From Vitrella brassicaformis CCMP3155 (lineage: Eukaryota; Protista; Chromerida), in contig CDMY01000246.1 of NCBI GenBank assembly GCA_001179505.1, forward strand, positions 1 to 64,000: DNA of 64,000 bases, given 5' to 3'. The notes beneath the pieces are model-generated. The model had not been told where the DNA came from. It searched no databases and saw nothing but the letters and a program-made list of their open reading frames with translations. This document shows, one piece after another, positions 946 to 49,200 of the stretch; positions within the stretch are counted from its first letter, which is position 1; each line of letters begins with the position of its first letter. The position numbers were made by a program, and so were the translations under genes.

Positions 946-1108
946 CGAATCACTCACACCGTGGGGCTCCTATGTGGCACGAGCGAACAACCGTTTGCTC
1001 CGTGAAGAAGATCATCCTTCAAGCTCGCAATTTTAAGCTCGCGCGTCTCGAAGGAAAAGAGGAAAAGAGGCAGAGGGAGCCTCCCCGCAGTGTTTGGCCA
1101 TCGCAAGA

Positions 1109-2780
1109 ATGTCGATGCAGCTGACCTTCATCAACCAAGTGACGGGCCAGACCGGCGCCCTTGAGCTGCCCGACGACATGGCCGTGTCAGCTCTGCCTAC
1201 CCTCCTGGAGGACCAGCTTGCCATCCCCGCAGCCCAGCAGGCCTTCGTCCACAACGGGAAGCCGCTGGTGCCCACCCAGACGCTCAAGGAGGCAGGATTG
1301 AGCAACGGGGAGCTCGTCATGGTGGTCGATAGGCGCATGCTGATGGCCCAGAGACCCGCCAACCCCCCAATGGCGAGGGCAGGCGCGCCAGCTGCAGCTG
1401 GTGGTGGTGCTGGTGCATCCTCCTCGGCCTCATCAGGTAGGTACGGGCACACATACGGGAATGGACGTATGTGTGTCCACCGTTTCCCCTTGTGGTGGGT
1501 TCTGTCTGTCAGGGTCTGCCGGTGCCAACCCGTTGGCGGCGTTCGACTTCAGCCGGATCAACGTCAACCGACAGCAGCAGCAGCAGCGACAGCAGCAGCC
1601 CCAGGCGCCGCAGGAGCTGCCCCCCGAGCACTGGGAGCAGCTGGCGCAGCGGTTCATCCAGGCCAACCACCCCCGCAACGACCCCCACGCCTACGGGACC
1701 CTCGTGTCGATGCACCCGCCATTGGCCGACGCCGTCAAGAGGGATGACCTCAAGGAGGTCTCGCGGTTCATGCGCGAGAACGCCGAGCGTCATTTCAAGG
1801 CCGAGGAGGAGCGGCTGCGTCAGATGCGGCTGGCCGCCGAGGACCCGTTCAACCTGGAGCTGCAGCACCGGGTGGAGCAGGAGATTTTGGAGAAGCGCGT
1901 CGACGAGCAGTACGAGATGGCGCAGGAGCATATGCCTGAGGCCTTCGGGCAGGTCTTCATGCTCTACATCGACTGCGAGATCAACGACATCCCTTTGAAG
2001 GCCTTCGTCGACAGCGGGGCGCAGAGCACCATTATGTCGGTCAAGTGCATGGAGCGCTGCCACCTCGGCAAGAACCTCGACAAGAGGTTCGCTGGCATCG
2101 CCAAGGGCGTCGGCACCTCCAAGATCGTCGGCCGCATCCACATAGTCAAGATGAAGCTCGGCAATGGATACTTCCCCTGCTCCATAACCGTACTAGAGGG
2201 TCAGCTCCCTGCCTCCCACACATGACACACACACACACACACAGACACGCTGGATGGATGGATGGATGTGTTTCTCTGTTGTCTTCCTGTCTGTGTCTGT
2301 GTGTGTATCTAAGATGACAAGGTGGATTTCCTGTTTGGCTTGGACATGCTGCGTCGGCACCAGGCCATCATCGACCTCAAGGCCAACGTCCTGCGGGTCG
2401 GCGACGAGACCGTCCCCTTCCTCTCCGAGGCAGAGGTCGGCGGCACCGCATTCGGCGGATGGGACAGCCCCACCCAACGAAAATCGGAGGGAGGCGGGCA
2501 GCCCAGCGGCGCAGCCAACACCACCGGTGGTGCGGCCGGTGGCCCGTCCACCAGCAGCACCACAAGTGCATCGGCTGGGGCCGCCCCTCCAGCCGCCGCC
2601 GCCGCCGCTGCTGGAGCTGCTGGAGCTGCAGGTGCTCAAGGGGGCAGTGCAGTAGAGCAGCTGGTGGGTTTGGGTTTCTCGCGCCAGGACGCCGAGAACG
2701 CGTTGAGGAGTGCGGGGGGCAGTGTGGAGCTCGCGGCGGCCCTGCTGTTCGAACAGCTGCAGGCTAGCACCATGCGATAG
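1109..2780 (+). CDS. DDI1: DNA damage-inducible protein 1 (UBL - helical - retroviral-like aspartyl protease - UBA), 3 exons
   Basis: N-terminal ubiquitin-like domain ([11 protein letters not shown]...FVHNGKPL). RVP motif [30 protein letters not shown], then [10 protein letters not shown] and [19 protein letters not shown]-terminal UBA ([33 protein letters not shown]). Introns ~1438-1512 and ~2210-2313. Confidence 0.95.
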
Positions 2781-4441
2781 ACACACAGACAGATCGATGC
2801 ATGTGGATGGAGGGAGGGACCAGACAGGCAGACAGACAGACAGGGAGGGAGGGAGGTATCCATCCCCTTCCCCTGCCCTCCCCAGGATCGAGCTTGCACG
2901 TGGCTGGTGGCATGGCATCAGTATGTGGCTGTGGTGCCTGAGTGGTTGGCTGTGAATTGGTCGGCCGGTGACTGACTGTCTGGCTGGCTTGAGTGAGGTT
3001 CGTGAGCGTGTGTTGTGTTGTGTTGCGCTGTGTTGCGCTGTGTTTGAGTGACCGGACGACAAGACAGGACAGCCTTATTTGTCAAGGGCAGACCAGACCT
3101 CGCGCATCTTCATGGGACCACGATGTTGTCTGTCTCCACGAAAGGGACGCACTGGCGCCTGACACTTCACGGCGATGCAACGAGCCGTGTCAGAGTCCTC
3201 TTTGTGCGATGAATGCAGCAGCTGATGATTGCTAGCGCGAGGGCCCCGGCCGGGCCCGAGCGCCGTCTGACTCAACCGGTGCGGGATTCACTGCAATGAC
3301 CCAGCTCTCGGAAGTTATGTAGCCCAGGTCGACACACAGCCTAGGTCAGCTGCAGATGGAGGCAGCCATCGTGCCAAGACTCACATTTGCCACTGTTCCT
3401 CTCACTGTTCCTCAGGTGTCGTCCACTGAGTCTATCGCGGGCCCATGTGCAGCTTAACGTTATCGCATCGCCCGTCACTTGTGGGGATGCGGCAGGGGAT
3501 TAATTAAATGAGCTGTGCTCACGTGATGCGTGCTGCGATTGATCAGCAAGGAGTGGGCCCCGGCTGCTCTTAGTCTTTGTTGCGGTGGAGGCAGGCGGGC
3601 TGTGTCTCGCTTCACCCATTTCTCTCTCATGTGTGTGGATGAGATGAGAACACTGATTCCATGTAGGCACAGAAATCCTGCTTTGCTTTGCTTTGCTTTG
3701 TCGCCAGCCAGAAGATACCTACGTACCTTACGGCAAACACTTGTCATTTCGCATGAGTGTGGTGTGGATGGCCGGAAGGGTCCTCTCTCTCTCTCTCTCC
3801 ATCCATCCATCCATCCAAATGAGGATACACCACCCTCCACAGAACCACACCACACACATACGCCCACACGCACACACACACACCTAAACGACAGACCCAC
3901 GCAACGTGACAGACCGACCTCTATCTCTCCAGCTATAGGAGCCTTAGCTATCTGTCCACCCTGAGACACGCACAGGGGAAGAGTTGGGACGAGCCGATGC
4001 TCAATAGAGCATTCCATTCATGTGAGTGATTGACCATACTGACTGATAATCAGACAGACAGACAGACAGGCAGGGAGGGAGGGAGTCAGGGAGGGAGGGG
4101 GGTAAAATGGCACACACAAGAGATGCCGCGCCCCGGTGCGTTGGGTCGTCATCCACAGGTACTACAGACGACACGACAGACAACATTGCGATCGACCTAC
4201 GCACGCTCACGGTCACGGGGTGGCCGGGTGGGGAATTAGTTACATCAACAAACAAACAAACAGCAGGATATATGCGATGATGCATTGCGATAATAATATA
4301 CTGGCCACACACTGACTGACTGACTGACACGGGGTCGGTCGGTCGTTTAAACACATTCCATGGCATCCATCGCACGTACACACATACGCAGAAAACATGA
4401 AAAGGCGGACAGACAGACAGGCAGGCAGGCTGACTAAAGAA

Positions 4442-7400
4442 TCACTCGCTCTGGTAGAGGTACCTGCAGTCAACGCACACAAACCACACACACCGACCAT
4501 GGAGACTAATCGCCCCATATGTGTGTGCGTGTGCGTGCTGACCCATAGTAGACGAGCTGTTTCTTGCTGCCGCACTGCTTGTCAGTCCCCGGCACACGCA
4601 CGGCCCTCACACGGAGGGTGGCGTCAGTGCCGCCACCAATGGTGCACCTCTCCTTGTTGTCCAGCACAGCCTTGCTCTCCGTCACGGCCTTGTTGCTGCT
4701 CTTGTCCACGCAGCTCAGGTCAAGGTTAGCCCACGTCTGACCCTTCTCCGCACGAGGATCAAACCTACACAATCACACACACACACACACACGAGGATAC
4801 CTCTCCCTGTGTCTCTCTCTCTGTGCGGTAGCAGACAGACTCACCAAAAAATGACGGCAGTGAGTTTGCCGACGTCCTCATCCAGTGGGCCGACTTCGAT
4901 GTCCACCTCCTCGCCATCCGCCACACACATGGTTCCGAGCGCCACGCCAGCCGGCTCCTTGAGCTTGTCGAATCGCTCTGCCTTGAGCACGCCGCCGCCG
5001 TAGAGTCGGTCGAAGCCGTGGTCGAGGAACTTGTCCTTGCCGGCCTTGAAGTTGGTCTGCAACAGGGTGGCCACCATCATGACGCCGGGGTCGTGGACGT
5101 CTTTGCCGAAATCAGACGACAAATACCTGGAAGGGGAAGGAGACACACACAACACAACACATGGATCTAGGTGTCATGTGTGTGTGGTTCGACCCCACCG
5201 ACCAGTCTGAGAAGAGGGCAGCGTATCCGGCCATGACAGGTGAGGCGAAAGAGGTGCCGCCGCCGTCAGCGAGGTACTTGCCGTCCTTATCGTACATGGA
5301 CGTGTACAGCCCCTGGCACACCACATCAACGATCGACCGATCCGTCTCGTAGTCGCCCTCAGACGAAAAGTAACTAAGTCACACACACGCAAGCAAAAGC
5401 ACGTCCGTCTCTGAGGGAGGGCATCCATCGTGTGCTCTCTGCTGCGCTGTGTGTGTCGGGTCAGGCGTACGAGATTTCCTCGCCGACGCAGTTGGTGCCT
5501 TCTTCGAGGTCCTCGAATCCTCCCAGGCTGCCGACGGTGAGGACGGCGTGTGCCATGCCGGGCGAGGCGGCGCTGCAGGTCTCGGCGTCCACCGCGTCAC
5601 GCTCGTTGCCGCTCGCCGCGATGAGCAACTTGCCGTTCTTGAAGAAGGAATTGCCCACCTTGCTGCCGCCGTCGGTGCCCAAGCAGTCCTTCTCGTAGCC
5701 ACCGGCCGAGAAGTTGATGATGTTCGGGCACTGGGCTGCATTGCAGCCAAACCAGACACATCCGTGCAGACAACAGACACCGTGTGTGTATTGTGTGGTT
5801 GGGGGGTGAGTAAATGAATACTCACTGTGTTTTTTGTCGCAGGCGAGCGTGGCGTCGAGTGCAGCGGCGAGGGACGAGTCGAATCCGCTGGTTTGGTAGT
5901 GACAGAGGGAGCACTTGGGGCAGACCCCCGTGTGCGCCTTGTTCCAGTCGTCGTCGACCTCCTCGTACTCGCTGGTGGCCTGGCCATTCATGGCGTCCCC
6001 GGCAGCCAGGCCCATGACGTTGGTGGCGTGCTCCGACTCGTCCTTCTCGTCGTAGGTCTTGACCTCCTTGCAGCCCTTCTCTTCGTCGATGCAGTTGTAG
6101 AGGTACCCGCCCTTGGGCGCCGTGAAGCGGAAGGGGCCGCCAGCGCTCGCCCGGAAACCCATGTGCTCGTTGTTGACGCCACTGTCGCTGATGTAAAAGG
6201 GCACCTGAGCGACAGACATGACACATTGGTCTCATCTCATCCTCTGCGTGTCGTGTTTGTGTCACCGGCGTACCTCTGCAATGCCGAGAGGGACGTTCTC
6301 CCTGCCGTAGTAGGTGCCGGCTCCGTTGTAGTCGGGGTAGAACTTGTCGAAGTGGTGAATTTCATTGCGGTGGCGGCCGTCACACACCAGCCGGCGACGG
6401 GGGGCGCCATTGGCGTCGTCTTTTCCCGCTGAGAGCTGCCTTCGGTCCTGGCTCATGGCGACTTCATCTGTTGGGGTGGCTGGCGTGATGATCTCCCTCT
6501 TGACGTCCTCGGCGATGAAATCGATGTCGGGGTGGGCTGTCAGCAGCTCCTCAATCTTGCCTGACGCACACAGATACATAGAGGAAGGACATGAGGGAGG
6601 GAGCACTCTAGTGTGTGTGTGTGTGTATGGGCGGGGCGGGTATGGGATGGATGTACTTACCGATTTTGAGGTTGGCCACGACGATGGGAGTGTACTCGCC
6701 CGACTGCAGCACCTTCCCCTTTAGTCTGTCGATGCCGTACTTGATGGAGGCCACCCGCATGGCGGTGTCGTTGCCCCTCCCGTCCATGATCCTCTCCTTG
6801 CAGTCCCGCAAGTCCGCCATCGTCCTCACCTCCCCCCTGCCCATCGAGCGCTTCAGCTGGTGCTGCACGTCCATGCTCGTGTCGGTGCGGCCCCCGAACA
6901 CCAGCAGCTTCAGGGCGTGGCCCTCGTCACTCGGACTCCGCTTGCCGTCCTCATGCTCCTGCCGGAACTGGTTGAGCTTGGCCTGCAGCGATGACGCCAC
7001 GCGCATCTCGTCACCCTCCTCTGCCAGGGAGAAGGCAGCGCCTTTCTTGGCAGCGAATGGCAGCTGCTGAAAAGCGGCGGCCTCAGCCGCCAGCCACTCG
7101 GCCTGCTCGTTCTTGTCGGCCTGGCGGAAGGGGAGCTCCACGATGGTCTGGGTCATGGTGGTGTCGCCCTCCTTGCTGATGGTAAGGCCCTCCATGCTGG
7201 CATAGCGCAGGCCACTGGGGGAGTCGACCGCCTCGTACAGAGGCACCTTCGGCGGCGTGTCCAGCACACCTGCAACACACGGAGAGTGTCGGGGCTGTCA
7301 CTCACTGCCTCTCTCTCGGCCCTCCCTCCCTCCCTCCCTCCCTCCATTTCACCGTTTGCCACCATCTCCTGCTGCGACACGTAGAAGTTGACAAACGGGT

Positions 7401-7536
7401 GTTTGAAGGGCGCCTCTCCCTTCTGCTGCTGTGCCTCCCCGGCCCGGAGAGAGGCGTCATCTACTGCTTGTGCCCGGCAGCAAGGTGATGACGCGAGTGC
7501 GATAAGGCAGCAGCATAGCAGGGCTGCCCTCGTCAT
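4442..7536 (-). CDS. Secreted subtilisin-like serine protease (family S8) with signal peptide and prodomain, multi-exon
   Basis: Signal peptide MTRAALLCCCLIALASSPCCRA. Catalytic motifs: FYISDSGV (Asp), EHATNVMGLAAG (His), LIAASGNE (oxyanion Asn), GGTSFASPVMAG (Ser). Also SYFSSEG...VDVVCQG. The last exon reads YGYLYQSE* with the stop at 4442-4444. Confidence 0.9.
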
Positions 7537-7867
7537 CTATCTGACGCCTCACAGGCTCCCTGCTCACTACCGCGGCTGTGACGTCGGCGTCTGCTGGGAG
7601 GGAGGGAGGGAGGGAGGGAGAGAGAGGGAGGGAGAAAGAATTTGTCCGATTGCCGTTGTGTGTGTGAGATCATCATCCTGGCCAGAGGCAGCTTTCCATG
7701 CCTTCGTTGGGCAGTGTTGATACTGGTGAAGCTGCTGTGACAGAGGGAACTCAGATCCCGACACGTCACCTTGCAAGTGCACTCGCATCCCGCTGGTTCC
7801 TCCGTCTGCGAGCTGAGCTTGCAGACGAAAGATCCTCCCCCGCAAGGCACAAGGTTCGCCAGGCAGG

Positions 7868-8044
7868 ATGTTCGACGATTTCGATGGCATCGTCCCCCCT
7901 CCCGACCCCACACTCAAAACCCACGAGAAGGACGGAATCGATGTCAATGCACCGCCTCCTCTCGCCCTCACCTTCTCCACCGGCACACTCATGGTCGTGG
8001 CCGCCCTCATCAGCATATTCCTGGCGTGGTGGTTCCACCGATAG
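7868..8044 (+). CDS. Putative 58-aa small ORF/uORF with a C-terminal hydrophobic segment
   Basis: MFDDFDGIVPPPDPTLKTHEKDGIDVNAPPPLALTFSTGTLMVVAALISIFLAWWFHR*. It is just below the ORF-track cutoff and ends 16 nt before the WDR13 ATG. Confidence 0.35.
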   Translation: MFDDFDGIVPPPDPTLKTHEKDGIDVNAPPPLALTFSTGTLMVVAALISIFLAWWFHR

Positions 8045-8060
8045 ATAGCCATAGATATCA

Positions 8061-10866
8061 ATGCATCTCGAGAGGCACCAGGCAATGGTGGGTGAGGGCG
8101 GCGGTGCTTTGGTGGAGCCGCAGATGGTGTGCCGCATCTACATGGAGCAGAGGAGGATGCTGCTCAGGGCCGTGCACACCACAGGGGAGGAGAGAGGAAC
8201 CTCACAAGCACAGGTCAGCTTCGGACACACTCAGCAGACAGTCAGGGACTGACTGCCTGACCCTTTCAACCCATGTGTGTGTGTGTGTGTGTGTGTCGAT
8301 TTCAGGCCGCTCCTGTGTCGGTGTCCAACCGGGTTGACCCTCAGAGTGCCTATAGCATCCTTAGGCAACAGCTCATCCAAGGTAGGTCCGTTCACTCGGC
8401 TCTCGAACGTACAAGCTCACACCGGCCACTGTGCCACTGCGATCTCTCCCGAATGTGGCGGCCACTGTGCCACTGTGATCAGCCTCCCATCGATGGCGGC
8501 CTCATGACGAGTGTCTGCAGCGTCCAGCGAAGGGCGGCAGAGATCGGGATATAAGTGCCGATACCGAGTGGGTGGATGTGGCGCCGTCCGAGGTCGAGGG
8601 CGAACCTGTAGCCGCACCATCGTCTGGTGTGGTTGGAGACCCCACATCCACCTCGACATCTAGCGACTCGGTGGAGGGGCAGACGGTGAGTGACATAGAG
8701 CAGAGAGCAGAGAGCAGATGGCAGATGACACCAGAGAAATCAAGGGCCAAACACCTTGGGGTGTATGTGTGTGTGTGTGTGTGTCTCAGAGTGCATCTTC
8801 GTCTTCGTTTTACCTGGTTGGCGGCATCCACCACATCTTCCACGAGCACAGTGACGCCATCACGGCAGTCGCATTCGCGAGGGAAAACCCAGACCTACTC
8901 GCAGCTGCTTCCAAGGTAGGATAATGGTCTGTCTATGCCTGTGTTGGTTGGATGCAGCCAGCATGACTTTGGCCCTCATCTGTGTCCGTGTCCGTGTCGT
9001 GTGTCTTAGGATGGGTGTGTGAGTCTGTGCACCGTCTTACGCGACCCCCGTATGCTGCACCGACTGGAGGGACACGACAGCGGTCAGTAAGATGGGATGG
9101 ATGCGATGCGCCTTGGTTGGTTGCGTACGTGTGGCTGTCATGTCATGTCATGGGTGTCTGATCTGAATGTGCAATGTGCAGGCGTCTATGACGTCGAGTT
9201 CAGTGCCCAGAATGAGTATCTAGCCACGGCTTCCGACGACCACACCGTCCGGGTGTGGAAGGTGTCGTCAGGACACTGCCTCCGGATCCTCCAGGGCGAC
9301 GCGGTGCGGTGGGCAGGAAGGAATGCTCTAACTAAGGCACAGCACACACCACACGCATTGCATTCTTTCTGTCGATCTGTCTGTCGCGTTGTCATCCCAT
9401 CCACCAGCCGTTTTGGGTTTTGCGGTTCCATCCAGTCAACTCGAACATACTCGCTGTAGGCACAGGCAGACAACGGACACAGACACACACAGACACAAGG
9501 TGTTTCTGTGCATATTGCTTGCAGTGCGGTGACGAGCGGGGCCTCGTTCGGCTCGTGAACGTCAGCACTGGACTCGCCATCTGCAGATACGCGGTGTGCA
9601 CCCCGCCCCCCCCTTCCCCTCTTCCCCCCCCCCACACACACACATGTAGAGAGATTAATAGACGCGAGCAGACAGCATCCGTCCGTGTGTCATGTTCTGT
9701 TGCTGGTGCAGACATCCTGTGCTGTGACGGCCATGACGTTCGACCACACGGGGAGCTGTCTGTTCGTCGGCAACTCCAAGGGCCGCATACACGTGGTGCT
9801 GCTGCACACCGTGTCTGACGCCAGAATTCTGCAAAACGTCAGCCTCACTAAGGTTGCCAACGTCACCATCACCCCAGCACCGCCACCATCACCATCGTCG
9901 TCAGGAAGAGGGCAGCGGTGCTGCGAGTCCGCTGCCGCCGTCCCGATGTCATTCACCTATACGCCGTGGCTGCCGTCACGTAGGCCAGCAAGACAGGCAC
10001 ACGTGTGCCACCCCTGTAATTAATGATGGTCCATCGGGTGTCCTGCCTGCCTGTGGGTGTGGTGTATGTCTGTGCACTGCAGTGAGCAGCCCTGCCGTCC
10101 TCGCCCCCTGCCGCGACCAACAGGTCCGCGTCTTCTCTGTGACGTCAGCCAAACCCCTTGAAGCACAGACCTCCTCCCTCGATGTGCGTAGCATGAGCAG
10201 CGCCAGCCCATCATCGGGATCGTCCCGTGATGTCCGTCAGGCCGCCCCCTACTCGGGCGTGGTTGGCCGCGTGCGGCTGGCCCTCGACACTCCCGAGGAC
10301 GGCAGGGCCAGGTGGGACTTTTGTGCCAGGGCGCCTTGCTGCGGTGAGCGATACATGACGGGAGGGAGGGAGGGAGGGAGGGCGGTGGATGGCCACGTGT
10401 GTGTGTGTGTTGTGCAGTCGGTGGTGGTGCGGACGGGACAGTGTATATCGTGGACTTGCTGAGGCACCGCACCGTCACTAGTGTAAGTGGGTGACATGAG
10501 GGAGGGAAGGGGCTGGCTGGGCGACTGGAAGGTGGGATGGATGGCCATTGTTCATCGGTGTGTGTGCGTGGACTGGACAGCTGTCTGCCCACAGCACCTC
10601 CGTCTCGTGTGCTGCGTGGTCATTCGGCGAGAACATCCTCGCCACGGGAGATGCTTCCGGGGTAAGTAACCTATGTGTGTGCGCATCTTTCTATCCATTC
10701 TGTCTGTCTGCTCGGGTGTGTGTGTGTGTTCATTCAGTGTGTGATCCTGTGGTCTCGCTCGGCCCAGTACTCCCGCCACCTGCGTGACCCCTGCAGCTTC
10801 ACCCACCCCCTGACCATGACAGATGAGGACATCCACACCATCACGGAGGAATCGGTGGCCGAGTGA
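8061..10866 (+). CDS. WDR13: WD40-repeat protein, WDR13 orthologue, multi-exon
   Basis: N-terminal IYMEQRRMLLR and YSILRQQL match the WDR13 N-terminal helices. WD repeats: GGIHHIFHEHSDAITAVAFARENPDLLAAASKDG; VYDVEFSAQNEYLATASDDHTVRVWKVSSG; FHPVNSNILA; AHSTSVSCAAWSFGENILATGDASG|CVILWSR. Confidence 0.85.
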
Positions 10867-37833: not shown

Positions 37834-40800
37834 TTATGGGTATCCTCCTCCTCCATAGGGACGCCGGCCGTGCGGCTCGCCGCGATTGACGGAGCCGTGG
37901 CGGCTCTCCACCTCACAGTCACCATACCCACCGTACCCCCCGTCGATCCCCTCCCCCTGTCCACCCATCAGGCGACGGGCACGATCGGTGTTGCGATAGA
38001 CGTGCTGGTGGTAGTGGTTGTGGCTGTGGAAGTGCTCGGATGGACGGTCCTGCGCCAACCTCGCGCGAAGCTCCGCATTCTGCACGCACACACAAATCCA
38101 AGAGGACATGTGAGTGAGGAGAGGAGAGCAGGTGGATTGTGTGCCCTCTGCCTGACGTACCTCCTGCATCAGTTGGTGCATGCGCATGCTCGTCTCTGTC
38201 GGAGGGACGACACTAATGTGGATGTTGGCGTTGTTGTTGTTGCCCCCATCCTGGCCTCGCTGCTGTCCCCCTCGCCCGCCAGGGTTTCCCCCCACATACC
38301 GATCAGCAGCCAGGCCCTGCTCAATCGCCCCCCGTGCTCGGTCGTCACGCTGCATGTCACGATGTCGGTCGGCCTCCATGAGGTAGCGATTGTCTCGGCG
38401 GTCGTTGCCTGCATTGATGCCGGGCACACGGCGCGGCAGGCGGGGCGGTGTTGGCGAACGGTGGCTGGAGAGCGATGGGCTGCGGGGACGGTGTTGCTGC
38501 GGCAGACGGCCTCTCACGGGTGAAAGGGGACGGCTGCTGCCAGAGTAGCGGCCCTCACGGCCACGCGGCATCGGTGGATGGGCCAGATCATCCATCCGGC
38601 CATGCCTACCGGCACCACGAGACGACTCACGAGACAAGGACGAGGCCGCGAGGTCGTGTCTGCGGAGGCCGGGTGTGTGACGAGGGGGGAATGCGATGCG
38701 GTCAAGATGGCCGGTGTTGCGGTACGTGCGGTCGCCTCGATTGTCATCATAATCACGCCCACGGTGGTCGTGCTCGCGGCGCTCCGGCCCCTCCAGCTGT
38801 CTCAGGCCGTCCCCCCGGCCCCCTCCCATCCTGTACCCCCGCCTCTCATGTCGCTCTTGTCTGCGGAGGGGTAGGGGCGACTCGTCCTGACGGTCCACAT
38901 GCAACTGGCCGCGCGTGCTCGGGCGCATGGCTGCGCGGCTGACAGACGGGCCGTCGAGAGAGGTGGGCCAATCTGAGGGAGAGATGGCCGGCTGGTGGCC
39001 CCCCAATCGCCCATCACCGTCACGGTCGCGGGCGACGCCAATATCATGGTCCAGACGGGTGTCCGCAAAGGTGTTGGCCGCAGGCCGGCTGGCGCTGAGA
39101 CGCGGTGGTGCGGGAGTCCTTGCTGGCGTGACTTGGGCAAGAGAGGGACTGGGCTCCTCCACTGGCTGCGGGGCCACAGAGAGAGAGCCTGGTTGACGAT
39201 CGTGGGCAGCGGGGCTCTCAGGCACCGACACGAGCGAGATGGGGGACGGCGGATGAGGTTGGTTTCGGCTCTCCTGCGACGGGGGCGGTGCGACAGACGG
39301 CGGCTGCTGGATGGACCGCTGTGATGTCATCGACGGCAAGACACTCTGCCATGCCTGCTCGAACTCGGGGGTACCAACCACACCAGATCGCGGGGCAGCT
39401 GGCGCTGGTGACGAACCGCCCAACCCGTTGCCGTTGCTGCCAGCAATGAGGGACTGCCAGAGATCCTCATCCTGGAATTGTGGGGCTGCTGATGACGCCT
39501 GAGACACCGTGCGGGTGGGCTGGGAGGGGGGCTGACCCTGAGCAGAGGGCAGGCCACCAACCGATCTGCCCAGATGAGTGCGGACAGCCTGCTGCAGCAC
39601 GCTCGTGTTGGGGCGTCGGGCTACTCGGGTGCTGACGGCGTCTCCGTCGACAGTGGGGCGATGCTGCACCTGGGCATGGGCAGCAGCACCAGCAGCAGCA
39701 GATACTTGTCGGGCCACAGGTGATGGGTTGGCCCTCTGCAGCGACGCAAAAGGCGTGTGCTGCGGCCCCGGCTGTTGCTTGGGGGCTGGGACCACCGAAG
39801 GACGTCCAGCCGGTGCAGCAGATGAGGTGCTCGGCCGCGGACCGCTGGGGCGCTGCTGCTGCTGCTGCTGCTGGTGGCCTCGCTGGTGAGTGTTGGGGAC
39901 ACGTGGCTGTGGCTGTGGCCGTGGGTCGGGAGGGCCGAGTGGCTTCAGCCTCCGGATGGGCGTGGTAAGCTGGCCGGGCGACAGTTGGCTGGTGGCTGTG
40001 GTGATCATGTGATGGAGCCGGGAGACCTCGAGTGAATCGTAGTGGCAGCCAAACAGGGGCAGGGAGGCGTCGGAGGTATCTGACAGACACACACGACCAA
40101 CCAGCCAACAATGAGACACGAGGGTAGTGGAGCCGCAACGATCGGCCTGGCTCGTGCTCATGGTTCACCTGATATGACGTCTGGAGGCGTGACGGTGTCG
40201 TCCATGAGTGCGTTCGACAACTGAGGCCGCTTGGCGTGGGGGTAGCTTCTGAGAGAAGACGGTGAGGTGAGACAGACCAGATAGTGCTGCGTGTGCTGGT
40301 TGGTCGCTGTGTGTGTGGATGTGTACGCACCTGTAGAAGTGGATGTAGCGGTCCTGCAGCTGCAGAAGCTCGGCACCAAAGATGGCTGCACCGAGCCATC
40401 CATTCATCCATCCATCCAGACGTCGATGACTCCATGCTTGTCTTTGCTCACTCACCCCAGGGGAAGCTCAGAAACGACTCAAATGCTACGTTGCCACCCG
40501 ACATGCGACACGAACTGCACACACACACACGGTGCAGCCAACAAGCCAGCCGGTCACCAGTGCAGTCTTGCGCCTTACCGATACTGCTCGTATGCGGCGA
40601 TGTACGCGGCGGATGCGAGCGCCACCTGTTGCTGCTGATCGACGCCGCCATCTGCAGCCGATGGCACGATGCGCAGCAGGTTGGCACTCGTCAACTCGAT
40701 CAACTTGCGCACTTCAAACGTCATCTGACATCCAGAGATGAGAGGGCGTGTGGTTGTGTGTGGGTGCGGTGCTTTCTGTGTGTGGGATGTGGGTACCCTT

Positions 40801-43800
40801 GAGGCGACGTCTTTGTCCTTCCGGCTTCGCTGTCGGTCCCTGTCGGTGGCGCGTACGATGCCCGTCAGCAGCTCTGACTCATCCGTCACACCATACTGAG
40901 TCCGCAACGTCTTCAACTGGACCATCACATACACACACATGCAAAGAGAGACGGTGCATGGCATGAGACCCCACTGCCCTCAGCCAGTCCGTCCGTCTGC
41001 CTTTGTGCGTGCGCCACCCACCGAGTTGATCCATTTCGTGTTCTCCTCCGCCATCTGGCGGACATAGCGTCCCGCATCGCGGTGCAGGAACTTGGGTTCC
41101 AACACCCCCAGAGGGACGGGCTGGTCAGCCTGCCAGCGCCACAGCTTGGCCTCCTCGTCGTCCTCGCCGTCGCAGACCTCCTCAGACGCACTGCTGCCGC
41201 ATGAACCGCCCCCACTGTCAAAGAACACGTCGCGAAGCACCATTCGACCACCGAGCGGCTGCATCTGGCTCGGGCGCTGCTCGCTGCCGCTCAGACGAGC
41301 CAGCGCCAATGATGTGTAGGCCCGGGCCACAGCGCCAATGTCCGACACAGCACAGGTTGACCCGCACTCGAGCTGGCCGGCTCATCCTCGCCTTCTCGCT
41401 CCAGCTGTTGATTCTCTGCCTCTTGGTCATCTGCCGCATCCTCATCGATCATGTGTGTGGCGTGGCGGGGGATGGGCCGATTGTGGTAGGGCTGGGGGGA
41501 GGGGCCGCCAGACGATGGCGACGGGGACACGGGGCCCCGGCCCCTGGCAAAGGAGTGGTTGCGGTTGGGTGGCTGCCGTGGCGTCTTGTTGAGTGGTGTA
41601 GGACGCTTGAAGATGCTGCCGTCGCCGGCCACATGGCGCCAGGGCTTGATGAAGTGGAGGACGGCATCGAGCGATCGGAGAGACACGGAGTATGAGGTGG
41701 GCTTGTTCTCGGCGGGCTGCTCAGCGGGGTTGATGGCAGGCTCACTGCCGCACAGACAAATAGCGCATAACGATCCAGGTGTGTTGGCCTTGAACATCCT
41801 TCAGCCCTTACCGAACGTTTCGGTGGTTTAGTCTGTGTCGAATTGGGGTGATGCGCTCGATGGGGTACAGCGGGGATGCCTCGCCGGAACGCGCCGCCTG
41901 CTGCAGGTGGTCGAGGGGGCTCCCCGCCAGGCTCGTCAGGATGTAGTCCTTGAGCTCGTCCTGCGGCCAGCCAATACACAGACACCAACGACCACACTGA
42001 ATGAACCACATTGTGGATGGATGGACACCTAACCCAACGACTCTGACCGACCTGGCTCCATTGCCAATCGAACACCGATATCTCGTACCTGCGGCCAGAC
42101 CCACACGCACACACACACACACATACACACACACACACACACACGAGGCCGTACGGTGCTGCCTGTAGGTCCCCTCTGTCTGTCTATCTGTCTCTGTGTG
42201 TGTGTGGATTGGTGCATTCATAAGGTCTGAGATAGAACTGCTCGAAGTGAGCCACAGCATCGGGCGCAGGGGGGCTGCTCTCGTCGCCCGACGCCCGACG
42301 CCCTTGGTCGGGCCAAGGGTTCAACGGGCCGACCAAGCCGGCCAGCAGCGGGTCGTCGGCACTGTGCTGCGCCCAGTGGCGGTCGAAGGCGTCGGCAATC
42401 GCCTCGCTCTGCGAAAATCCAGCGATCCACCCACACACACACACAGACAGAGGGAAATGGATGGATGGATGGATGGAGGCATTGCGCGTGTTGTGTTTGT
42501 CTTGCCTCAAACAAGATGTGAAGAGATGAGGTTGGGGCGGTGCCCCTCCCACGCTCAGAGGGGAGGGCGAGGACATCCACCACGCCGTCACTCGTGACGA
42601 CCCCGAGGGCCAGCGACTGCAGGAATCTCCTAATGGCGGCCATCTGGTCGGCAAGGAAGCCCTTGTTGTAGAAGTCTGCACGCTCGCCGTTCTCTGAATG
42701 AATCCCACCCACATCCCACACACACACACACACACAGGTGCATCGCATCATGTGATGTGCTCTAGTTGGCTGGTTGCTTGGTCGGTACGGTACCGGGGTA
42801 GTTGACGCCGTGCAGTCCTTCGATGCGCCTCATGCGTCCGAAGACAGGCGGGCCGAACAGCTTCTCCTCTCTGCTGTTGTCCTTGCCGTACTCGTGGGAC
42901 AGCGACGACATGCGGTTCTCGTAGGCCTGGATGTAGGGGTCCTCCACTGATGGATGGATGGATGGACACACACACACACACACACAGGCAGCACACACAA
43001 CGGTTGGTGTGTTATGGGCTTGCCTTCCTCCCTCCCTACCTCCTTCCCTCCCTCCCTCCCTGTGCCTCACCGTAGTCGACGCGGACAAAGTGGTGCTGTC
43101 TGCCGTCCTTCTCCCTCACACCCATCAGCCGTCGCCCGTTGCCGCCACACTCCATGTGCAACGCACTGACACAACAACAACAACAACAACCACAACAACC
43201 ACACCAGTGAGTAGCACATACCGTCATCGAGTAATGGATGGATGGATGGGTGGGTGGATGGATGTGTGAATGCGGTCAGGCTGCCGCTCACGTACGTCAT
43301 GAAGGCCCTGGCGGTCTTCTCGTCGACGAAGCGCACCATCACGCTCATCCTGCCCACGCCCACGTCGAGCTCCTGCAGAAACTGGGTCGTCGGCTGCACA
43401 CACACATGGGCGCACACACGAAAAACAGGCATGAAGTGGGTGTGTGAGCGCGGCTTGTGTGGGCATCTGTTGTGTGTGTGTGTGTGTGTGTGTGTGCCGA
43501 CGTACTATGACAGGCCCAACGACATGGGGGCCTGGGTAGCCGAGAAGAAGCGCGGCTTTGACATCCACCTGTTTTCTGCAGTAAGAGAGAACGCACAGCC
43601 ATCCAGCCCTCCATCCAGCCATCCAGCCAGCGCACACACATACAGTCTCTATCTTTCACTCTCTCTCTCACTCACTCTAGGTCTGTGACGGTGACGCCCC
43701 TCGTGAAGCGCACGCCTTGGCCGTTGTCGAACTCGCGACAAAACAGCACATCCTTGAGCAACACGGTGTCACGGTACACTGCGCAAACCAACCAAACCAC

Positions 43801-44397
43801 AGGTGCGAGAAGCCTGTTCTCCCTCCCTCCCTCCCTGCGTCCCTCTCCAACGTACGTGTGGGCGCGGCGGTCTTGTACTTGTCCTCGACATCGATGTAGT
43901 TGGGCGGGGAGGGGGCCGAGGGGTCGCTGAGGCTGCCGTTGGTGAGCCTGCACTGCACCTGGAACTGGACGGCCTCGACGTGCAGCGGAATGCACAGCTT
44001 GGCGGTGGTGGCGGAGCTGTGGGTGTTGTGCACCAGGTCCTTGAACCGCACGGTGCACTTCCGCAGCTGGTCGCACACGTGATGGCGATCCATGTGCTCA
44101 GGGCTGATGTTCACACAGCACACATAAACACACACACACACACGGACAGGGAGCGATGAATGGATGGATGGAGTGTGGTGTGGTGTTTGTTGGCTCACTC
44201 AGGGAGGTATCGCCATTTGATGATGTGGCCTTCAACGAGGCCTGTGAGTGTGCAGGGCAGGACCCACCGCAGCTGCACCAGCCGCCACATCGGCTGCCCG
44301 TCGGCGTCTGTGCGCACCTCCACACCATCCACCACCTCCACGCGCATCGGGCAACGCTCATCTGCAACAGGACACACACCCACAAGAGCCTCCGTGC

Positions 44398-44430
<33 letters not shown>

Positions 44431-46145
44431 TGTGTGCATGTGTGTGAATCTGTCTGTCTGTCTGCCATTGGTGTCATCCGCTGACCTTCCTCCTCGAAGC
44501 GTCGTTCCTCCTGTTTGGCCTGGCGGCATATGTCGCCAATCACACTGTTCGACACAAAGATCCTCCCACGCTGAGCAAACACCGACAAACCAACGGAACA
44601 CGCGCACAACGAACGGTTGGATGTCCTCTGTCTGTCTGTTTGTCTGTCTGTCTGTGTGTCTGGGTGTCTGTCTGACCTCTTCGTGATACGCCGTGGCCAG
44701 GAAGTCCGGCCGCAACGGTGGAATCAGCGACGTGGAAAGAACCACAGGCTCGCCTGCACACACAAGCACATAACACCACACCACAGCGCACCACAGCGCA
44801 GCAGCGGCCACATTATGCCCCAGATGCACCCACTTGACCGCATAAGTAAATGGCCTACCGGTCTTTGCGAAGTCGACAGCATCGCTGTGCAGCTCAGCGA
44901 GCTCGAGGCACGTCGGATGGCGGGCCTATGTGGTTTGGTGCGATGTGAGAACACAACAACACAAGACAAGACAACCAACACTCCTAGGAACGTGTTTGTG
45001 TGTGGGTGCAGACTTGCCTTCTGTTCGGCGTAGATGTCGGGCTGGTGGCACTGGTTCAGCCAGGCCACAGCTATCTTGCCCAGCGTGTCAAACCTGAAGT
45101 AGTCGATGAAGTAACTCTGCACACAACACAACACAACACAACAGCAAACGACACACAGCCATCCATTCTCCCCTCCCCTCCCCTCCCTCTCAGCCCTCCC
45201 GGTTTGTCACACACACTTGCGTGTAGTGCCCGTTGCCTGACGGCCGGGTCACGGAGGCCCACCTCGGGCAGTCTCTTCGGCCGCGGCTTGTAGTACTCCG
45301 CACCCGGCGGGTTGGTCGTGGGCGGAACGCATCGAGGGTCCCAAATCGCGTGGTACATGTCACCTGACACACACAAAAAACATATCCACACACACAATGA
45401 GATACGTCTGTGATGTGGCGGCTGAAGGAGTGAGAGTGGGNNNNNNNNNNNNNNNNNNNNNNNNNNNNNNNNNNNNNNNNNNNNNNNNNNNNNNNNNNNN
45501 NNNNNNNNNNNNNNNNNNNNNNNNNNNNNNNNNNNNNNNNNNNNNNNNNNNNNNNNNNNNNNNNNNNNNNNNNNNNNNNNNNNNNNNNNNNNNNNNNNNN
45601 NNNNNNNNNNNNNNNNNNNNNNNNNNNNNNNNNNNNNNNNNNNNNNNNNNNNNNNNNNNNNNNNNNNNNNNNNNNNNNNNNNNNNNNNNNNNNNNNNNNN
45701 NNNNNNNNNNNNNNNNNNNNNNNNNNNNNNNNNNNNNNNNAGGGGTCGGTGGCTTCCGTACCGTCTAGGTCAGAGCCGCTGAGTTCGTTTGGGTGCGGCC
45801 GGGGGCCCTTGACGGGGAAGACTATGACGTTGACACAGTGGCGCAGCCGCGGCCTGTCCACCGCCTCGAAGACGCGTGTGTCGCCGGGGTCGAAGGCGGG
45901 GTTCTTGGTCACTACCACCTTGCCTGAAACACCACACCACAACACACCACAACACACCTCACAGGCCTCATGTGATCGACAATCGGACGCTCTGGAGCGC
46001 CGCACGCCCTCTCGCACCTTTGACGGTCTTGACGGCTTCGTCTGGGCGCTGTATGCGCAGGTGGATCTCACCGTAATTGAGGACGCCGGTCTCGTCGGGC
46101 ACGCCGAACAGCACTGCACCCTCCTGCACACACACACACACACAC

Positions 46146-46257: not shown

Positions 46258-49200
46258 TGTGTGACCTACGTTGACAAACAGGTGTGTCTTGGTCTCGATC
46301 ATCTTGCAGTCCAGCCGACGGATCTCCCGCAGGCATTTCAGCACAAAGGGATCCCTCATGCTGCGGTCGCCGTCCAGACGCCTCGTCTGCGTCAGCAGCT
46401 TGACCAGTGTGGGCCCGATGACGCTCTCACGCCCGACGCTCCGAAGCATCTGGAGTGCGGCATCTGACAGATGGATGGATGGATGGACGGCACACACATA
46501 TATTTGCTGTGGTGGGGTGTTGTGTGGTGGGTGGCTGGGTCGGGGGGTCTCTACCTTTGTCGGTAGTGGCTTTGTTGAGTACGCCCATGGCGTCGCGGAA
46601 GATCTCGTGGAAGACGCGAGGCGGCACCTCACGCGTGAGCAGCAGAGTGATGATCTCTCGGTTCAGGTGCAGTGGGATGAAGCGACTGACACACCACACA
46701 CATACACATACACACGGATGCGATGCGGCACTGGGTGTCCTCGTGTGTGGTGTGGATGTGGAGCATGATGTGGTGTGGATGTGCGGTGAGGTGGTGCGGA
46801 CGCGTAGCCGTTGTCGCAGACTTCAAGGATGTTGTGCTGGGCCGTGAACTTGGTCTGCGATGGGCGGAGAGCCAGGCGATAGCTGCAGCGATCACACACA
46901 CACACACACACATCCACCATCCGGCCTCGACACATTTGCACACACACCTTGGCCTGTCTGGCGCCTCTCTGGCTGTCTGTGTGGTTAGCTAGCTTACGGG
47001 CGTGGGTGTTTGTCTCTGAAGTTGAGGTCGACCTGCAGCATGCCCTTGGCGCCGTTGAACCGGATCTGCACACACACATCAAGACACACATCAGGCCAGG
47101 CCACACACAAACACACACACACACACACACGTGTGGTGTGGATGGGGTGACCTGACGCGGCCCGGCTCACCTGAAAGGCGTGTGGGACGAAGTCGAGCTT
47201 CAGCTGTGTCGCCAGATCCTCAGCTACACTCTCGTGGCAATATCCCGCACCATCTGCACACATCGACAACAACACACCACACACACACACACACAGATGG
47301 ATGGATGGATGGATGCCTGACCCCCATTGCTGTGCTGACCAGTGAACTCATACACGGCGTCATTGGCATGGTCGCCTGGGTCCACTGCTCGAGCGATGTC
47401 GTCCACACGAACCACCTCGCTGGGGTGGATGCAGATGCCCCGCTGGGTGGCCGAGAAACACTGCCCCATGCGGGCAGCGAACTTGCCTGCAGACAGACAT
47501 GACACACAGCACAGCACAGACACACCGGACGACACCACGCAGGTCTGTCTCCCTCTCTCTGTGTNNNNNNNNNNNNNNNNNNNNNNNNNNNNNNNNNNNN
47601 NNNNNNNNNNNNNNNNNNNNNNNNNNNNNNNNNNNNNNNNNNNNNNNNNNNNNNNNNNNNNNNNNNNNNNNNNNNNNNNNNNNNNNNNNNNNNNNNNNNN
47701 NNNNNNNNNNNNNNNNNNNNNNNNNNNNNNNNNNNNNNNNNNNNNNNNNNNNNNNNNNNNNNNNNNNNNNNNNNNNNNNNNNNNNNNNNNNNNNNNNNNN
47801 NNNNNNNNNNNNNNNNNNNNNNNNNNNNNNNNNNNNNNNNNNNNNNNNNNNNNNNNNNNNNNNNGGGGATGCGCGGGGAGGGGGGAGGGGAGGGCCTTAC
47901 TGGGTTGTTTGATGTGTGAGAAATCGCCCATGAAGGACCAGATCTGCTCCAGCGTCAGGCCCTTGTCCTTGTCTGACGTCACACACACACACACACACAC
48001 AGGTGTCGGTGTGTGCCCACCACGATCGATTGACTTGGTTACTGTACCAGGTCTGAGTAGCCAGGCCGATTGCTCCCTCACTTGGCTGCTGCTGAAGCCC
48101 AACAGCACGTAGGGCGGCAGATGTCCCACACGAACACCTGACGGACGGACGGACGGATGGATGGATGAGTGGATGGATGGATGGATGGATCACATATGGG
48201 AGGGAGGGAGGGAGTGTGTGTGTGTGTGTGTGTCGAGCGAGCTTACCCTCCTCGAGTATGCGTTGGATGCGGTCCTTGACGAGGGGCGCTACCGTCACGT
48301 GATAGTGGAGTTGTTTGCCGTCCTCGTCTGCACACACATACACACACGAGCGACAGAGTGGGGACGAATAAATGCATTCGATGAGATGGACGCGCCATCG
48401 CCGCCGTCCGCGCACTTACCGGTGAATCTGCCGCGTACGAAGTGGTCGGTGTGCTGCCGATACCGCCGAAGCACTCTGAACCAACACGACAAACACACCA
48501 CACACATACACACAGAGTCTCTCTCTCTCTCTCTCTCTTGATCCCCGTCAGTGTGTGTGGATGACGTTGTGTGTGTGTGTGTTTTGTGTTGCATACCGGT
48601 TGGACTGCTCGACGAAGGGCCCCCTGACGTACATCTTGAGTGGCGTGACGTCGACGTGCAGAATGCGCATGCAGTGCTCGGGGTACTCCATGAGGGTGTG
48701 GACCAGGCCCAGCTGCCGCTGACCACGGGCAGCGATCCTCTCAAACTCTGATGAGCACCCGACACACCACACCACACCACACACAAGGGGAGGGAGGGAG
48801 GGAGGGCATTGTTGCGCTGTGTGGTGTGGTGTGGTGTGGTGACCTTGTTTGGGGTTCATGATGGGCTTGCCGGGCTTCTCCATCTCCTACATCGGTCAAA
48901 CATGCGCCGCCATCGGTCTCATGTCATATGATTCGTGTGATTGGAATGGACCACACCCTTCCCTTGTGTTATGTTCAGTCAGTGTGGTGTGAAGCCGACC
49001 GTCAGGCAGTACAGCTTGACTTTGACCGAGTACGAGGGGCTCAGCAGACACTCTGACACAAACGATGGCTCAACCTGACCACACACACAACACACAACAC
49101 ACAACACAACACGTCAATCGCCTGTCCGCCTGGCTTGTCCAAGTGTTGGCTGCACGTACCGCCCTGGTGCCCTGGAGTATGCCTGCAGGGCAGCACAGCC

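What the first reader, a model, noticed from the sequence alone, without database searches (positions are those of the whole stretch)
41130..44370. RdRP contains a roughly 600-aa insertion inside its C-terminal head domain
In RDR1/2/6- and QDE-1-type enzymes, the segment PDF...S.SVIG.I.R is followed within tens of residues by the L..l...YG...E.E...G helix. Here [17 protein letters not shown] (~44570-44490) and [21 protein letters not shown] (~40920-40860) are separated by about 13 additional in-frame exons. Much of the insert looks globular and beta-rich (e.g. [26 protein letters not shown]; [21 protein letters not shown]; [20 protein letters not shown], faintly RRM-like). I do not recognise this architecture. 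It may be a new accessory domain for template selection or partner binding in an alveolate RNA-silencing system.
Basis: partly seen in the sequence, partly recalled or inferred. Interest (0 to 1): 0.75.

Follow-up and report, generated by a model that had tools for sequence, protein, structure and literature searches.

The report
RdRP with FN3 and RRM-like insert
An RNA-silencing-type RNA-dependent RNA polymerase gene of the alga Vitrella brassicaformis really carries about 730 extra codons (one fibronectin-III-like plus three RRM-like domains and a disordered linker) between its catalytic core and its C-terminal head, but in this copy the reading frame is broken twice inside that block.

Summary
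On the minus strand, the RDR motifs ...[11 protein letters not shown] (exon 44570-44486) and [15 protein letters not shown] (exon 40916-40797) are 3.6 kb apart. Three transcript contigs confirm that the exons between them are spliced into the RdRP mRNA.

The block is about 730 codons. About 130 other RDRs have 22-106 residues at this site. The three other Vitrella RdRP genes checked have 611-745 and Chromera velia Cvel_14927 has 1118.

AlphaFold models with structure searches give one FN3-like domain, three RRM-like domains without RNP aromatics, and an acidic disordered linker. The block sits at the neck-3/head junction of RDR2. No Pfam family matches it. Sequence relatives of the FN3-like part were found only in chromerid RdRPs.

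New here: this copy is interrupted. A 164-nt intron-like piece (TT..AG ends, in-frame TAG) stays unspliced in all three transcripts. A frameshift lies between 41381 and 41297. The mRNA therefore reads as three ORFs and the head is out of frame. A paralogue cDNA carries core, insert and head in one ORF.

Function (template or partner binding near the cleft) is inferred only. The scan reached the same FN3+RRM reading earlier on two paralogues (s1-242746, s1-248726).

The parts
44486..44925 (-). Last three exons of the PF05183 RdRP core: AVDFAKT, ...[29 protein letters not shown]... They correspond to the trigger-loop and neck-3 region of RDR2.
   Evidence: The paralogue P0002 aligns to RDR2 up to residue 970.
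43881..44350 (-). FN3-like beta-sandwich, encoded by exons 44361-44199 and 44103-43856.
   Evidence: Model residues 9-133 match Robo3 FN1 (Z 10.1, rmsd 2.6 A over 94 residues) and titin Fn3 domains. A profile of this module weakly hits fn3 and I-set repeat proteins. Colinear matches lie in three paralogues.
42924..43865 (-). RRM-like domain A, encoded by the end of exon 44103-43856, exons 43778-43676, 43575-43506, 43393-43296 and 43165-43071, and the start of 42946-42794.
   Evidence: Model residues 139-271 match U2AF65 RRM1 (Z 9.8, rmsd 3.3 A over 91 residues) and hnRNP A1/A2 RRMs. Junctions confirmed by cDNA.
42316..42851 (-). RRM-like domain B, encoded by exons 42946-42794, 42693-42506 (GC donor) and the start of 42408-.
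   Evidence: Model residues 296-408 have the strand-helix-strand-strand-helix-strand order. Foldseek hits to tandem-RRM proteins (DND1, IMP3, U2AF65) span domains A and B. This domain has the weakest support of the four.
42089..42252 (-). Intron-like piece of 164 nt left unspliced in all three transcript contigs. Its ends are TT..AG and it carries an in-frame TAG at 42186-42184 that ends ORF1.
   Evidence: Transcript block 42410-42048 is contiguous in L018 and L019, and L020 runs contiguously from 42410 to its end at 42136, inside the piece. ORF1 ends ...[12 protein letters not shown]. None of the seven in-frame boundary placements gives canonical splice sites (read). Paralogues have one continuous exon here.
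41591..42087 (-). RRM-like domain C, encoded by exon 42088-42052, exon 41960-41812 and the start of 41744-.
   Evidence: The 117-aa model (pLDDT 67.8) matches U2AF65 RRM1 best (Z 8.2, rmsd 2.5 A over 76 residues). Almost all of the top 50 are RRMs in both Foldseek and the Foldseek-independent search.
41140..41590 (-). Pro/Ser-rich then acidic low-complexity linker. It holds a frameshift somewhere in 41381-41297; the old frame stops at TGA 41293-41291.
   Evidence: Transcript block 41745-41019 is colinear with the genome without any gap. Frames are shown. The same region is one open frame in paralogues L014 and L016.
40579..41139 (-). Start of the RdRP head: [10 protein letters not shown]...HRD...TKWINS | [21 protein letters not shown]... 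| ...[12 protein letters not shown]. Exons run to 41022, then 40916-40797 and 40724-40579.
   Evidence: A precomputed PF26253 RdRP_head hit lies on transcript ORF3. P0002 1888-1974 aligns to RDR2 1009-1089.
37834..40515 (-). Rest of ORF3: small exons, then a long Pro/Gln/Arg-Gly-rich low-complexity tail ending at 37834.

Best explanation
This is one of at least four paralogous cellular RdRP (RDR) genes of Vitrella brassicaformis CCMP3155. The four examined share a lineage-specific block of 610-750 residues with Chromera velia, where it is 1118 residues. The block is inserted at the junction between neck helix 3 and the first helix of the C-terminal head.

The block consists of an FN3-like beta-sandwich, three RRM-like (ferredoxin-like) domains and an acidic disordered linker.

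Shown: the block is transcribed, spliced into the RdRP mRNA, conserved at protein level among paralogues, and absent at this site from other RDRs sampled.

Inferred: the RDR2 head tip faces the template cleft. An array hung from the head base is therefore placed to hold single-stranded template RNA or a silencing partner next to the template entry, acting as a built-in recruitment arm. The FN3-like domain would serve as spacer or docking surface.

In this copy the frame is broken twice after RRM-like domain B. One break is an unspliced intron-like piece with a stop codon; the other is a frameshift. The locus most likely yields a head-less 1476-aa product or is a transcribed, decaying paralogue. 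The intact form of the architecture is represented by the paralogues.
For: - The PF05183 core and an intact DLDGD motif are present.
- cDNA contigs confirm all junctions.
- Colinear matches to the insert exons lie just downstream of the core in three paralogues.
- The paralogue cDNA L021 has core, insert and head in one 1189-aa ORF, with PF05183 and PF26253 on the same product.
- P0002 has 744 residues where RDR2 has 39, between RDR2 residues 970 and 1009.
- Spacing between the two anchor motifs is 22-106 residues in about 130 other RDRs and 611-1118 in the chromerid proteins.
- A profile search of 1.84 billion representatives with the FN3-like module returned only four Vitrella and one Chromera RdRP at strong or specific scores.
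- The position of the RDR2 head and neck 3, and the suggestion that the head tip guides template RNA, come from PMC8713982.
- The frame breaks are shown.
Against: - No Pfam family reaches threshold on any part of the insert.
- The models rest on alignments of five sequences. Mean pLDDT is only 62-68 and Z scores are 8-10.
- The RNP1/RNP2 aromatic positions are not conserved, so RNA binding cannot be assumed.
- Beyond the FN3-like module and the pre-head segment, the Chromera insert is not detectably similar to the Vitrella ones.
- The survey of other RDRs is a sample of about 225 proteins. In about 75 of them the second anchor could not be located, including two gregarine RDRs.
- A minor correctly spliced or frame-restoring isoform of this copy cannot be excluded from assembled contigs alone.
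Confidence: 0.8

Rival explanations
1. The RRM-like domains are pseudo-RRMs used for protein-protein contacts, as in UHM-type or raver1/vinculin-type binding. Together with FN3 they would dock a partner such as a Dicer, an Argonaute or a helicase rather than bind RNA.
For: RNP1/RNP2 aromatic residues are missing in all three domains. FN3 domains are typical protein-interaction modules. Structural neighbours include RRMs known in protein complexes, such as raver1 RRM1 with vinculin and PID-3/TOFU-6.
Against: The fold alone does not separate the two uses. Many RRMs bind RNA through non-canonical surfaces. No partner is known.
Confidence: 0.35
2. In this window the gene is a transcribed pseudogene or a truncated paralogue. 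Here the insert and head have no function as one polypeptide, and only the paralogues make the full enzyme.
For: An in-frame TAG lies in an unspliced piece with TT..AG ends, and a frameshift follows. Both are present in the genome and in transcript contigs from two independent sources. In Arabidopsis, nonsense mutations that remove part of the head of RDR2 or RDR6 abolish silencing (PMC8713982).
Against: ORF1 (1476 aa) is otherwise intact with DLDGD and a full-length PF05183 match of about 489 bits. More than 50 introns are correctly removed. The downstream frames stay open for 208 and 983 codons, which suggests the lesions are recent. A weak GTTCTA donor used in the NCBI model and 15 hypothetical GT-AG pairs could restore the frame in minor isoforms.
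Confidence: 0.5
3. The exons belong to a separate or nested gene, are normally skipped, or reflect a misassembly that separates two halves of an ordinary RDR.
For: None was found. Two 300-N runs lie in the gene, but both are inside introns that the transcripts bridge.
Against: Transcript contigs from two independent sources join the core, the insert and the head region in one molecule. The same order is seen at three other loci and in Chromera.
Confidence: 0.02

Closest known systems
Plant RDR1/RDR2/RDR6-type cellular RdRPs (Arabidopsis RDR2, PDB 7EU0/7ROZ)
   Same: The whole core aligns: P0002 551-1144 to RDR2 378-970, E 1e-86. The DLDGD motif, the AVDFAKTG / PDF / S.S.lG.lyR motifs and the head helix L..LM..YG...E.E..TG are kept. 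Paralogue P0001 has an N-terminal RRM_1 match.
   Different: The neck-3 to head-helix spacing is 39 residues in RDR2 and 610-750 in Vitrella (about 730 codons here). The extra block holds four folded domains. There is also a C-terminal low-complexity tail of about 700 residues.
Neurospora QDE-1 (PDB 2J7N)
   Same: Same two-barrel catalytic core; P0002 861-1029 aligns at E 1e-21.
   Different: Only the catalytic part aligns. No relation between the QDE-1 head and the chromerid insert was detected.
Other domain-accreted RDRs: helicase-RDR fusions in gregarines, green algae and Paratrimastix, and the ankyrin-bearing RDR P0121
   Same: They also show that RDRs pick up accessory domains in protist lineages.
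   Different: Where measurable, the spacing at the neck-3/head site stays 36-57 residues and the additions lie outside it. In P0121 the head motif follows the core after 44-47 residues and the ankyrin repeats come after the head.
Tandem-RRM proteins (U2AF65 RRM1-2, IMP3 RRM12, DND1 RRM12) and FN3 domains (titin, Robo3)
   Same: Predicted fold and tandem arrangement.
   Different: Sequence identity is 10-20%. There is no Pfam match and no RNP1/RNP2 aromatics. The domains sit inside a polymerase.

Membership tests
Eukaryotic cellular RdRP (PF05183, RDR/QDE-1 type) | Full-length match to the RdRP core profile | tested here: met
   The transcript-derived ORF1 (P0003) matches PF05183 positions 1-581 at 489.5 bits.
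Eukaryotic cellular RdRP (PF05183, RDR/QDE-1 type) | Catalytic DxDGD loop | tested here: met
   [15 protein letters not shown] at P0003 residue 884.
Eukaryotic cellular RdRP (PF05183, RDR/QDE-1 type) | C-terminal head domain (PF26253) present | tested here: met
   A precomputed PF26253 hit lies on transcript ORF3. The motif aligns with the RDR2 head helix through paralogue P0002. The local Pfam copy returned no PF26253 match, so this rests on the precomputed hit.
Eukaryotic cellular RdRP (PF05183, RDR/QDE-1 type) | Core and head encoded in one open reading frame | tested here: not met
   In this copy a stop at 42186-42184 and a frameshift in 41381-41297 are present in both genome and transcripts. 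The feature is met in paralogue cDNA L021.
Fibronectin type III (PF00041) | Sequence match to the family profile above threshold | tested here: not met
   No fn3 hit on exon pieces, on paralogue open frames or on whole proteins. The only sequence link is weak hits of the module's profile to fn3 and I-set repeat proteins, E 2e-8 to 1e-3.
Fibronectin type III (PF00041) | Seven-strand beta-sandwich of FN3 topology | tested here: met
   This is a predicted model only. Residues 9-133 have pLDDT mostly 70-83, Z 10.1 with rmsd 2.6 A over 94 residues to Robo3 FN1, and TM 0.6-0.7 to titin Fn3 domains.
RNA recognition motif (PF00076) | Sequence match to the family profile | tested here: not met
   No RRM_1 hit inside the insert.
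RNA recognition motif (PF00076) | Strand-helix-strand-strand-helix-strand fold | tested here: met
   Predicted models only. Domain A: Z 9.8 to U2AF65. Domain C: Z 8.2 to U2AF65 RRM1, with nearly all top hits being RRMs. Domain B: supported by secondary-structure order and tandem-RRM hits only.
RNA recognition motif (PF00076) | RNP1 and RNP2 aromatic or basic consensus on strands 3 and 1 | tested here: not met
   The strand 3 sequences are [15 protein letters not shown] and SYSVSL. The strand 1 sequences are [17 protein letters not shown] and EISVF.
RNA recognition motif (PF00076) | RNA binding | not testable with these tools
   Needs EMSA or CLIP on recombinant domains.

The most novel reading that the evidence does not exclude
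The FN3 plus triple RRM-like array is a built-in template-selection arm. Hung at the base of the head next to the template cleft, it would capture particular single-stranded RNAs, or their bound partners, and feed them to the active site. It would do in cis what separate cofactors such as SGS3 do for other RDRs. This would also give the first handle on what the poorly understood RDR head is for.
Probability: 0.25. Interest if true: 0.65.

Novelty: new variant of a known kind. Interest (0 to 1): 0.5.

Why it matters
The role of the RDR head domain is unclear, although head truncations abolish silencing in plants (PMC8713982). A lineage that has grafted four folded domains onto the head base offers a natural experiment on how RDRs choose templates or partners. 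It also points to a distinctive RNA-silencing apparatus in chromerids, the free-living relatives of apicomplexan parasites. The broken frame in this copy, next to intact paralogues, gives a ready comparison of head-less and complete forms.

Tried and rejected
- **Exon-by-exon scans.** Pfam scans of the insert and of long open frames in the paralogues gave no family.
- **PDB sequence searches with exon pieces.** Only the AVDFAKTG exon matched RDR2.
- **Word-index search with the P0002 insert.** It returned only P0002 itself because the candidate list was saturated. It says nothing about absence.
- **Look-up of a Chromera P0006 contig.** Not on record.
- **Is the unspliced 164-nt piece a repeated element?** Its only genomic matches fall on its (GT)n/(AC)n part, so there is no element family.
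- **Is the ankyrin-bearing RDR P0121 an insert at the same site?** No. Its head motif follows the core after 44-47 residues.
- **Apparent 1097-residue spacing in Penstemon P0137.** Probably a gene model that fuses two tandem RDR copies; this was inferred from its length and anchor positions, not checked.
- **Nested gene or exon skipping.** Rejected by the cDNA.
- **Can a hidden intron explain the frameshift?** Fifteen GT-AG pairs would restore the frame, but all have poor sites, several would delete conserved residues, and none is used in the transcripts.
- **Literature.** Searches found nothing on chromerid RDRs or on an insert at this site.
Full report
**Origin and gene**

The window is contig C246:1-64000 of a 72.7-Mb, 1064-contig genome. 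Exact look-up of the encoded proteins names it Vitrella brassicaformis CCMP3155. A many-exon gene on the minus strand matches Pfam RdRP (PF05183) exon by exon between about 48.5 kb and 44.8 kb.

**Observation**

I read the minus strand and built a GT-AG exon chain by hand.
- The core ends with exons 44925-44859 (AVDFAKT), 44753-44677 (...[12 protein letters not shown]) and 44570-44486 ([17 protein letters not shown]...).
- The head motif [21 protein letters not shown] lies in exon 40916-40797.
- Between them the chain runs through exons at 44361-44199, 44103-43856, 43778-43676, 43575-43506, 43393-43296, 43165-43071, 42946-42794, 42693-42506, 42408-, 42088-42052, 41960-41812 and 41744-41022.

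A profile search then recovered the transcript-derived protein of this gene, P0003. Looking up where P0003 is encoded returned three spliced transcript contigs: L018 and L019 from JGI sample 3300017148, and L020 from Logan run SRR646408. They align to the window at 98-100% identity and confirm every junction listed above. This includes a GC-AG intron after 42506.

No hand-joined spliced model was handed to any search or folding tool. Exons were searched by reference, and longer stretches were taken by reference from natural transcript contigs (L018, L021). One script joined sequence in memory only, to test whether hypothetical introns would leave an open frame. Nothing from it was printed, saved or searched.

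**Size and place of the insert**

The closest intact paralogue, P0002 (CEM03318), aligns to Arabidopsis RDR2 in two pieces. Residues 551-1144 match RDR2 378-970, and residues 1888-1974 match RDR2 1009-1089. That leaves 744 residues where RDR2 has 39.

According to the RDR2 structure paper, position 962 of the maize orthologue MOP1 lies within neck helix 3, which leads through a flexible loop into the head, and the head tip faces the cleft (PMC8713982). The insert therefore sits at the neck-3/head junction.

I built two small anchor profiles, one for AVDF...S.S.lG.lyR and one for l..LM..YG...E.E, and measured the spacing between them.
- It is 22-106 residues (median about 40) in about 130 RDRs of plants, fungi, animals, algae and two gregarines in which both anchors were found.
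- It is 611 residues (C91 paralogue), 735 (C246b), 745 (C338) and 1118 (Chromera) in the chromerid proteins.
- One plant outlier is probably a gene model that fuses two tandem copies. This was inferred from its length and anchor positions, not checked.
- In about 75 proteins the second anchor was not detected, so the survey is a sample and not a census.

In this window the cDNA distance between the anchors is 2366 nt. Minus the 164-nt unspliced piece, that is about 730 codons.

**Conservation**

Exon 44103-43856 finds colinear matches of 41-58% identity directly downstream of the RdRP core at three other loci of the genome: C338, C91 and C246 near 116 kb. Other insert exons match in the same order.

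A profile of the first module was searched against 1.84 billion representative proteins. Strong hits were only four Vitrella RdRPs. One specific hit was Chromera velia Cvel_14927, positioned just after its core. The weak hits were fn3 and I-set repeat proteins.

phmmer searches with the four inserts against all of the roughly 225 RDRs collected hit chromerid proteins only. The cDNA contig of the C91 paralogue (L021) carries PF05183, the insert and PF26253 RdRP_head in a single 1189-aa ORF.

**What the insert is made of**

No Pfam family matches any part of it. Two AlphaFold2 models were made from transcript references, each with an alignment of five sequences.

*Model 1* (441 aa, mean pLDDT 61.7, domain cores 70-83):
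- Residues 9-133 form an all-beta sandwich. It matches Robo3 FN1 (Z 10.1, rmsd 2.6 A over 94 residues) and titin Fn3 domains (TM up to 0.70).
- Residues 139-271 match U2AF65 RRM1 (Z 9.8, rmsd 3.3 A over 91 residues).
- Residues 296-408 have the strand-helix-strand-strand-helix-strand order. Hits to tandem-RRM proteins span this domain and the one before it.

*Model 2* (117 aa, pLDDT 67.8):
- It again has the RRM topology.
- U2AF65 RRM1 is the best of 48,161 chains (Z 8.2, rmsd 2.5 A over 76 residues).
- Nearly all of the top 50 are RRMs, both in Foldseek and in the search that does not rely on Foldseek.

The Z scores are middling and the alignments shallow, so these are fold assignments, not proof of homology. 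The RNP1/RNP2 aromatic residues are not kept. After the third RRM-like domain comes a Pro/Ser-rich then acidic low-complexity linker, followed by the conserved W.WP...HRD...W segment that leads into the head helix.

**State of this copy**

Two features separate this locus from its paralogues.

*An unspliced intron-like piece.*
- Block 42410-42048 is contiguous in L018 and L019. L020 runs contiguously from 42410 to its end at 42136, inside the piece.
- It holds a 164-nt piece (42252-42089) that looks like the local introns, with AC and GACA repeats and an ending in CAG.
- None of the seven in-frame boundary placements gives canonical sites. The placement that restores ...FYLRP|YEISVF... has TT..AG ends (read).
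- The three paralogues have a continuous exon at this point.
- Reading through gives TAG at 42186-42184, which ends ORF1 at 1476 aa.
- The NCBI model CEL96779 avoids the stop by using a weak GTTCTA donor that deletes five conserved residues. The transcripts do not support that splice.

*A frameshift.*
- Block 41745-41019 is colinear with the genome without any gap.
- The conserved reading nevertheless changes frame between 41381 and 41297, and the old frame stops at 41293-41291.
- Paralogues C338 and C246b read this region in one frame.

The mRNA thus holds three ORFs: transcript nt 246-4676, 4785-5411 and 5354-8305. The head lies in the third. The catalytic DLDGD and the full core are intact.

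Most likely this copy makes a head-less protein or is a recently disabled, still transcribed paralogue. Minor frame-restoring isoforms cannot be excluded from assembled contigs.

**Mechanism**

Shown: a conserved, expressed, multi-domain block sits at the head base of chromerid RDRs.

Inferred: the RDR2 head tip is thought to contact incoming template. The array is therefore well placed to hold template RNA or a partner protein at the cleft entrance. The missing RNP aromatics make protein docking a serious rival to RNA binding. Neither was tested here.

**Comparison and novelty**

The enzyme is an RDR of the RDR1/2/6 kind by every core feature. The insert is a new variant of that kind, made from common folds.

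Other accessory-domain RDRs turned up in the searches, such as helicase fusions and one with ankyrin repeats. Where measurable, they keep the short spacing at this site.

Literature searches found no description of chromerid RDRs or of an insert at this site.

Earlier notes of this scan (s1-242746, s1-248726) reached the same FN3 plus RRM reading on two paralogues. My results agree with them. They add the Chromera homologue, the spacing survey and the two frame breaks of this copy.

Noticed in passing
window 42505-42409 (minus strand): The intron after exon 42693-42506 has a GC donor (GCAAGA...AG). All three transcript contigs confirm it, and the paralogues keep the same exon end (...IVFE / ...ILFQ).
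   Followed up: yes
window 42252-42089 (minus strand): An intron-like 164-nt piece sits where three paralogues have one continuous exon. Short similar words flank it (TTATGA upstream, GTACGA downstream). This would fit a recently gained intron whose donor G became T. Its only genomic matches fall on the microsatellite part.
   Followed up: partly
window 40161-37834 (minus strand): A long low-complexity tail rich in Pro, Gln and Arg-Gly (RG/RGG-like, ending in GGYGGYG) continues the head-containing frame. The paralogues have similar tails of about 700 residues. No family was assigned.
   Followed up: no
window 36992-35879; L018 9072-9959: The transcript contigs run past the end of the RdRP gene into the neighbouring gene on the other strand, the MCU-like gene noted in s1-233381. 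Either the 3' ends overlap or the unstranded assembly merged two mRNAs.
   Followed up: no
window 45441-45740 and 47565-47864: Two runs of exactly 300 N lie inside introns of the RdRP gene. The transcripts bridge both, so no coding sequence is missing.
   Followed up: yes
G000:C379:26550-26966 (L017): A fifth, weaker PF05183 match (E 3e-8) shows no similarity to P0002 or to the insert. It may be a divergent RDR or a fragment.
   Followed up: partly
proteins P0143, P0152, P0157, P0159, P0164, P0170: A class of 2200-3100-aa RDRs fused to DEAD/Helicase_C domains occurs in gregarines (Porospora), green algae (Ostreobium, Bryopsis) and Paratrimastix. They keep the short neck-3/head spacing.
   Followed up: partly
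P0001 residues 43-98 (C246, near 118 kb): The paralogue CEL96798 has a borderline N-terminal RRM_1 match (E 3e-4), as plant RDRs do. Chromerid RDRs may therefore carry RRM-type domains at both ends of the core.
   Followed up: no
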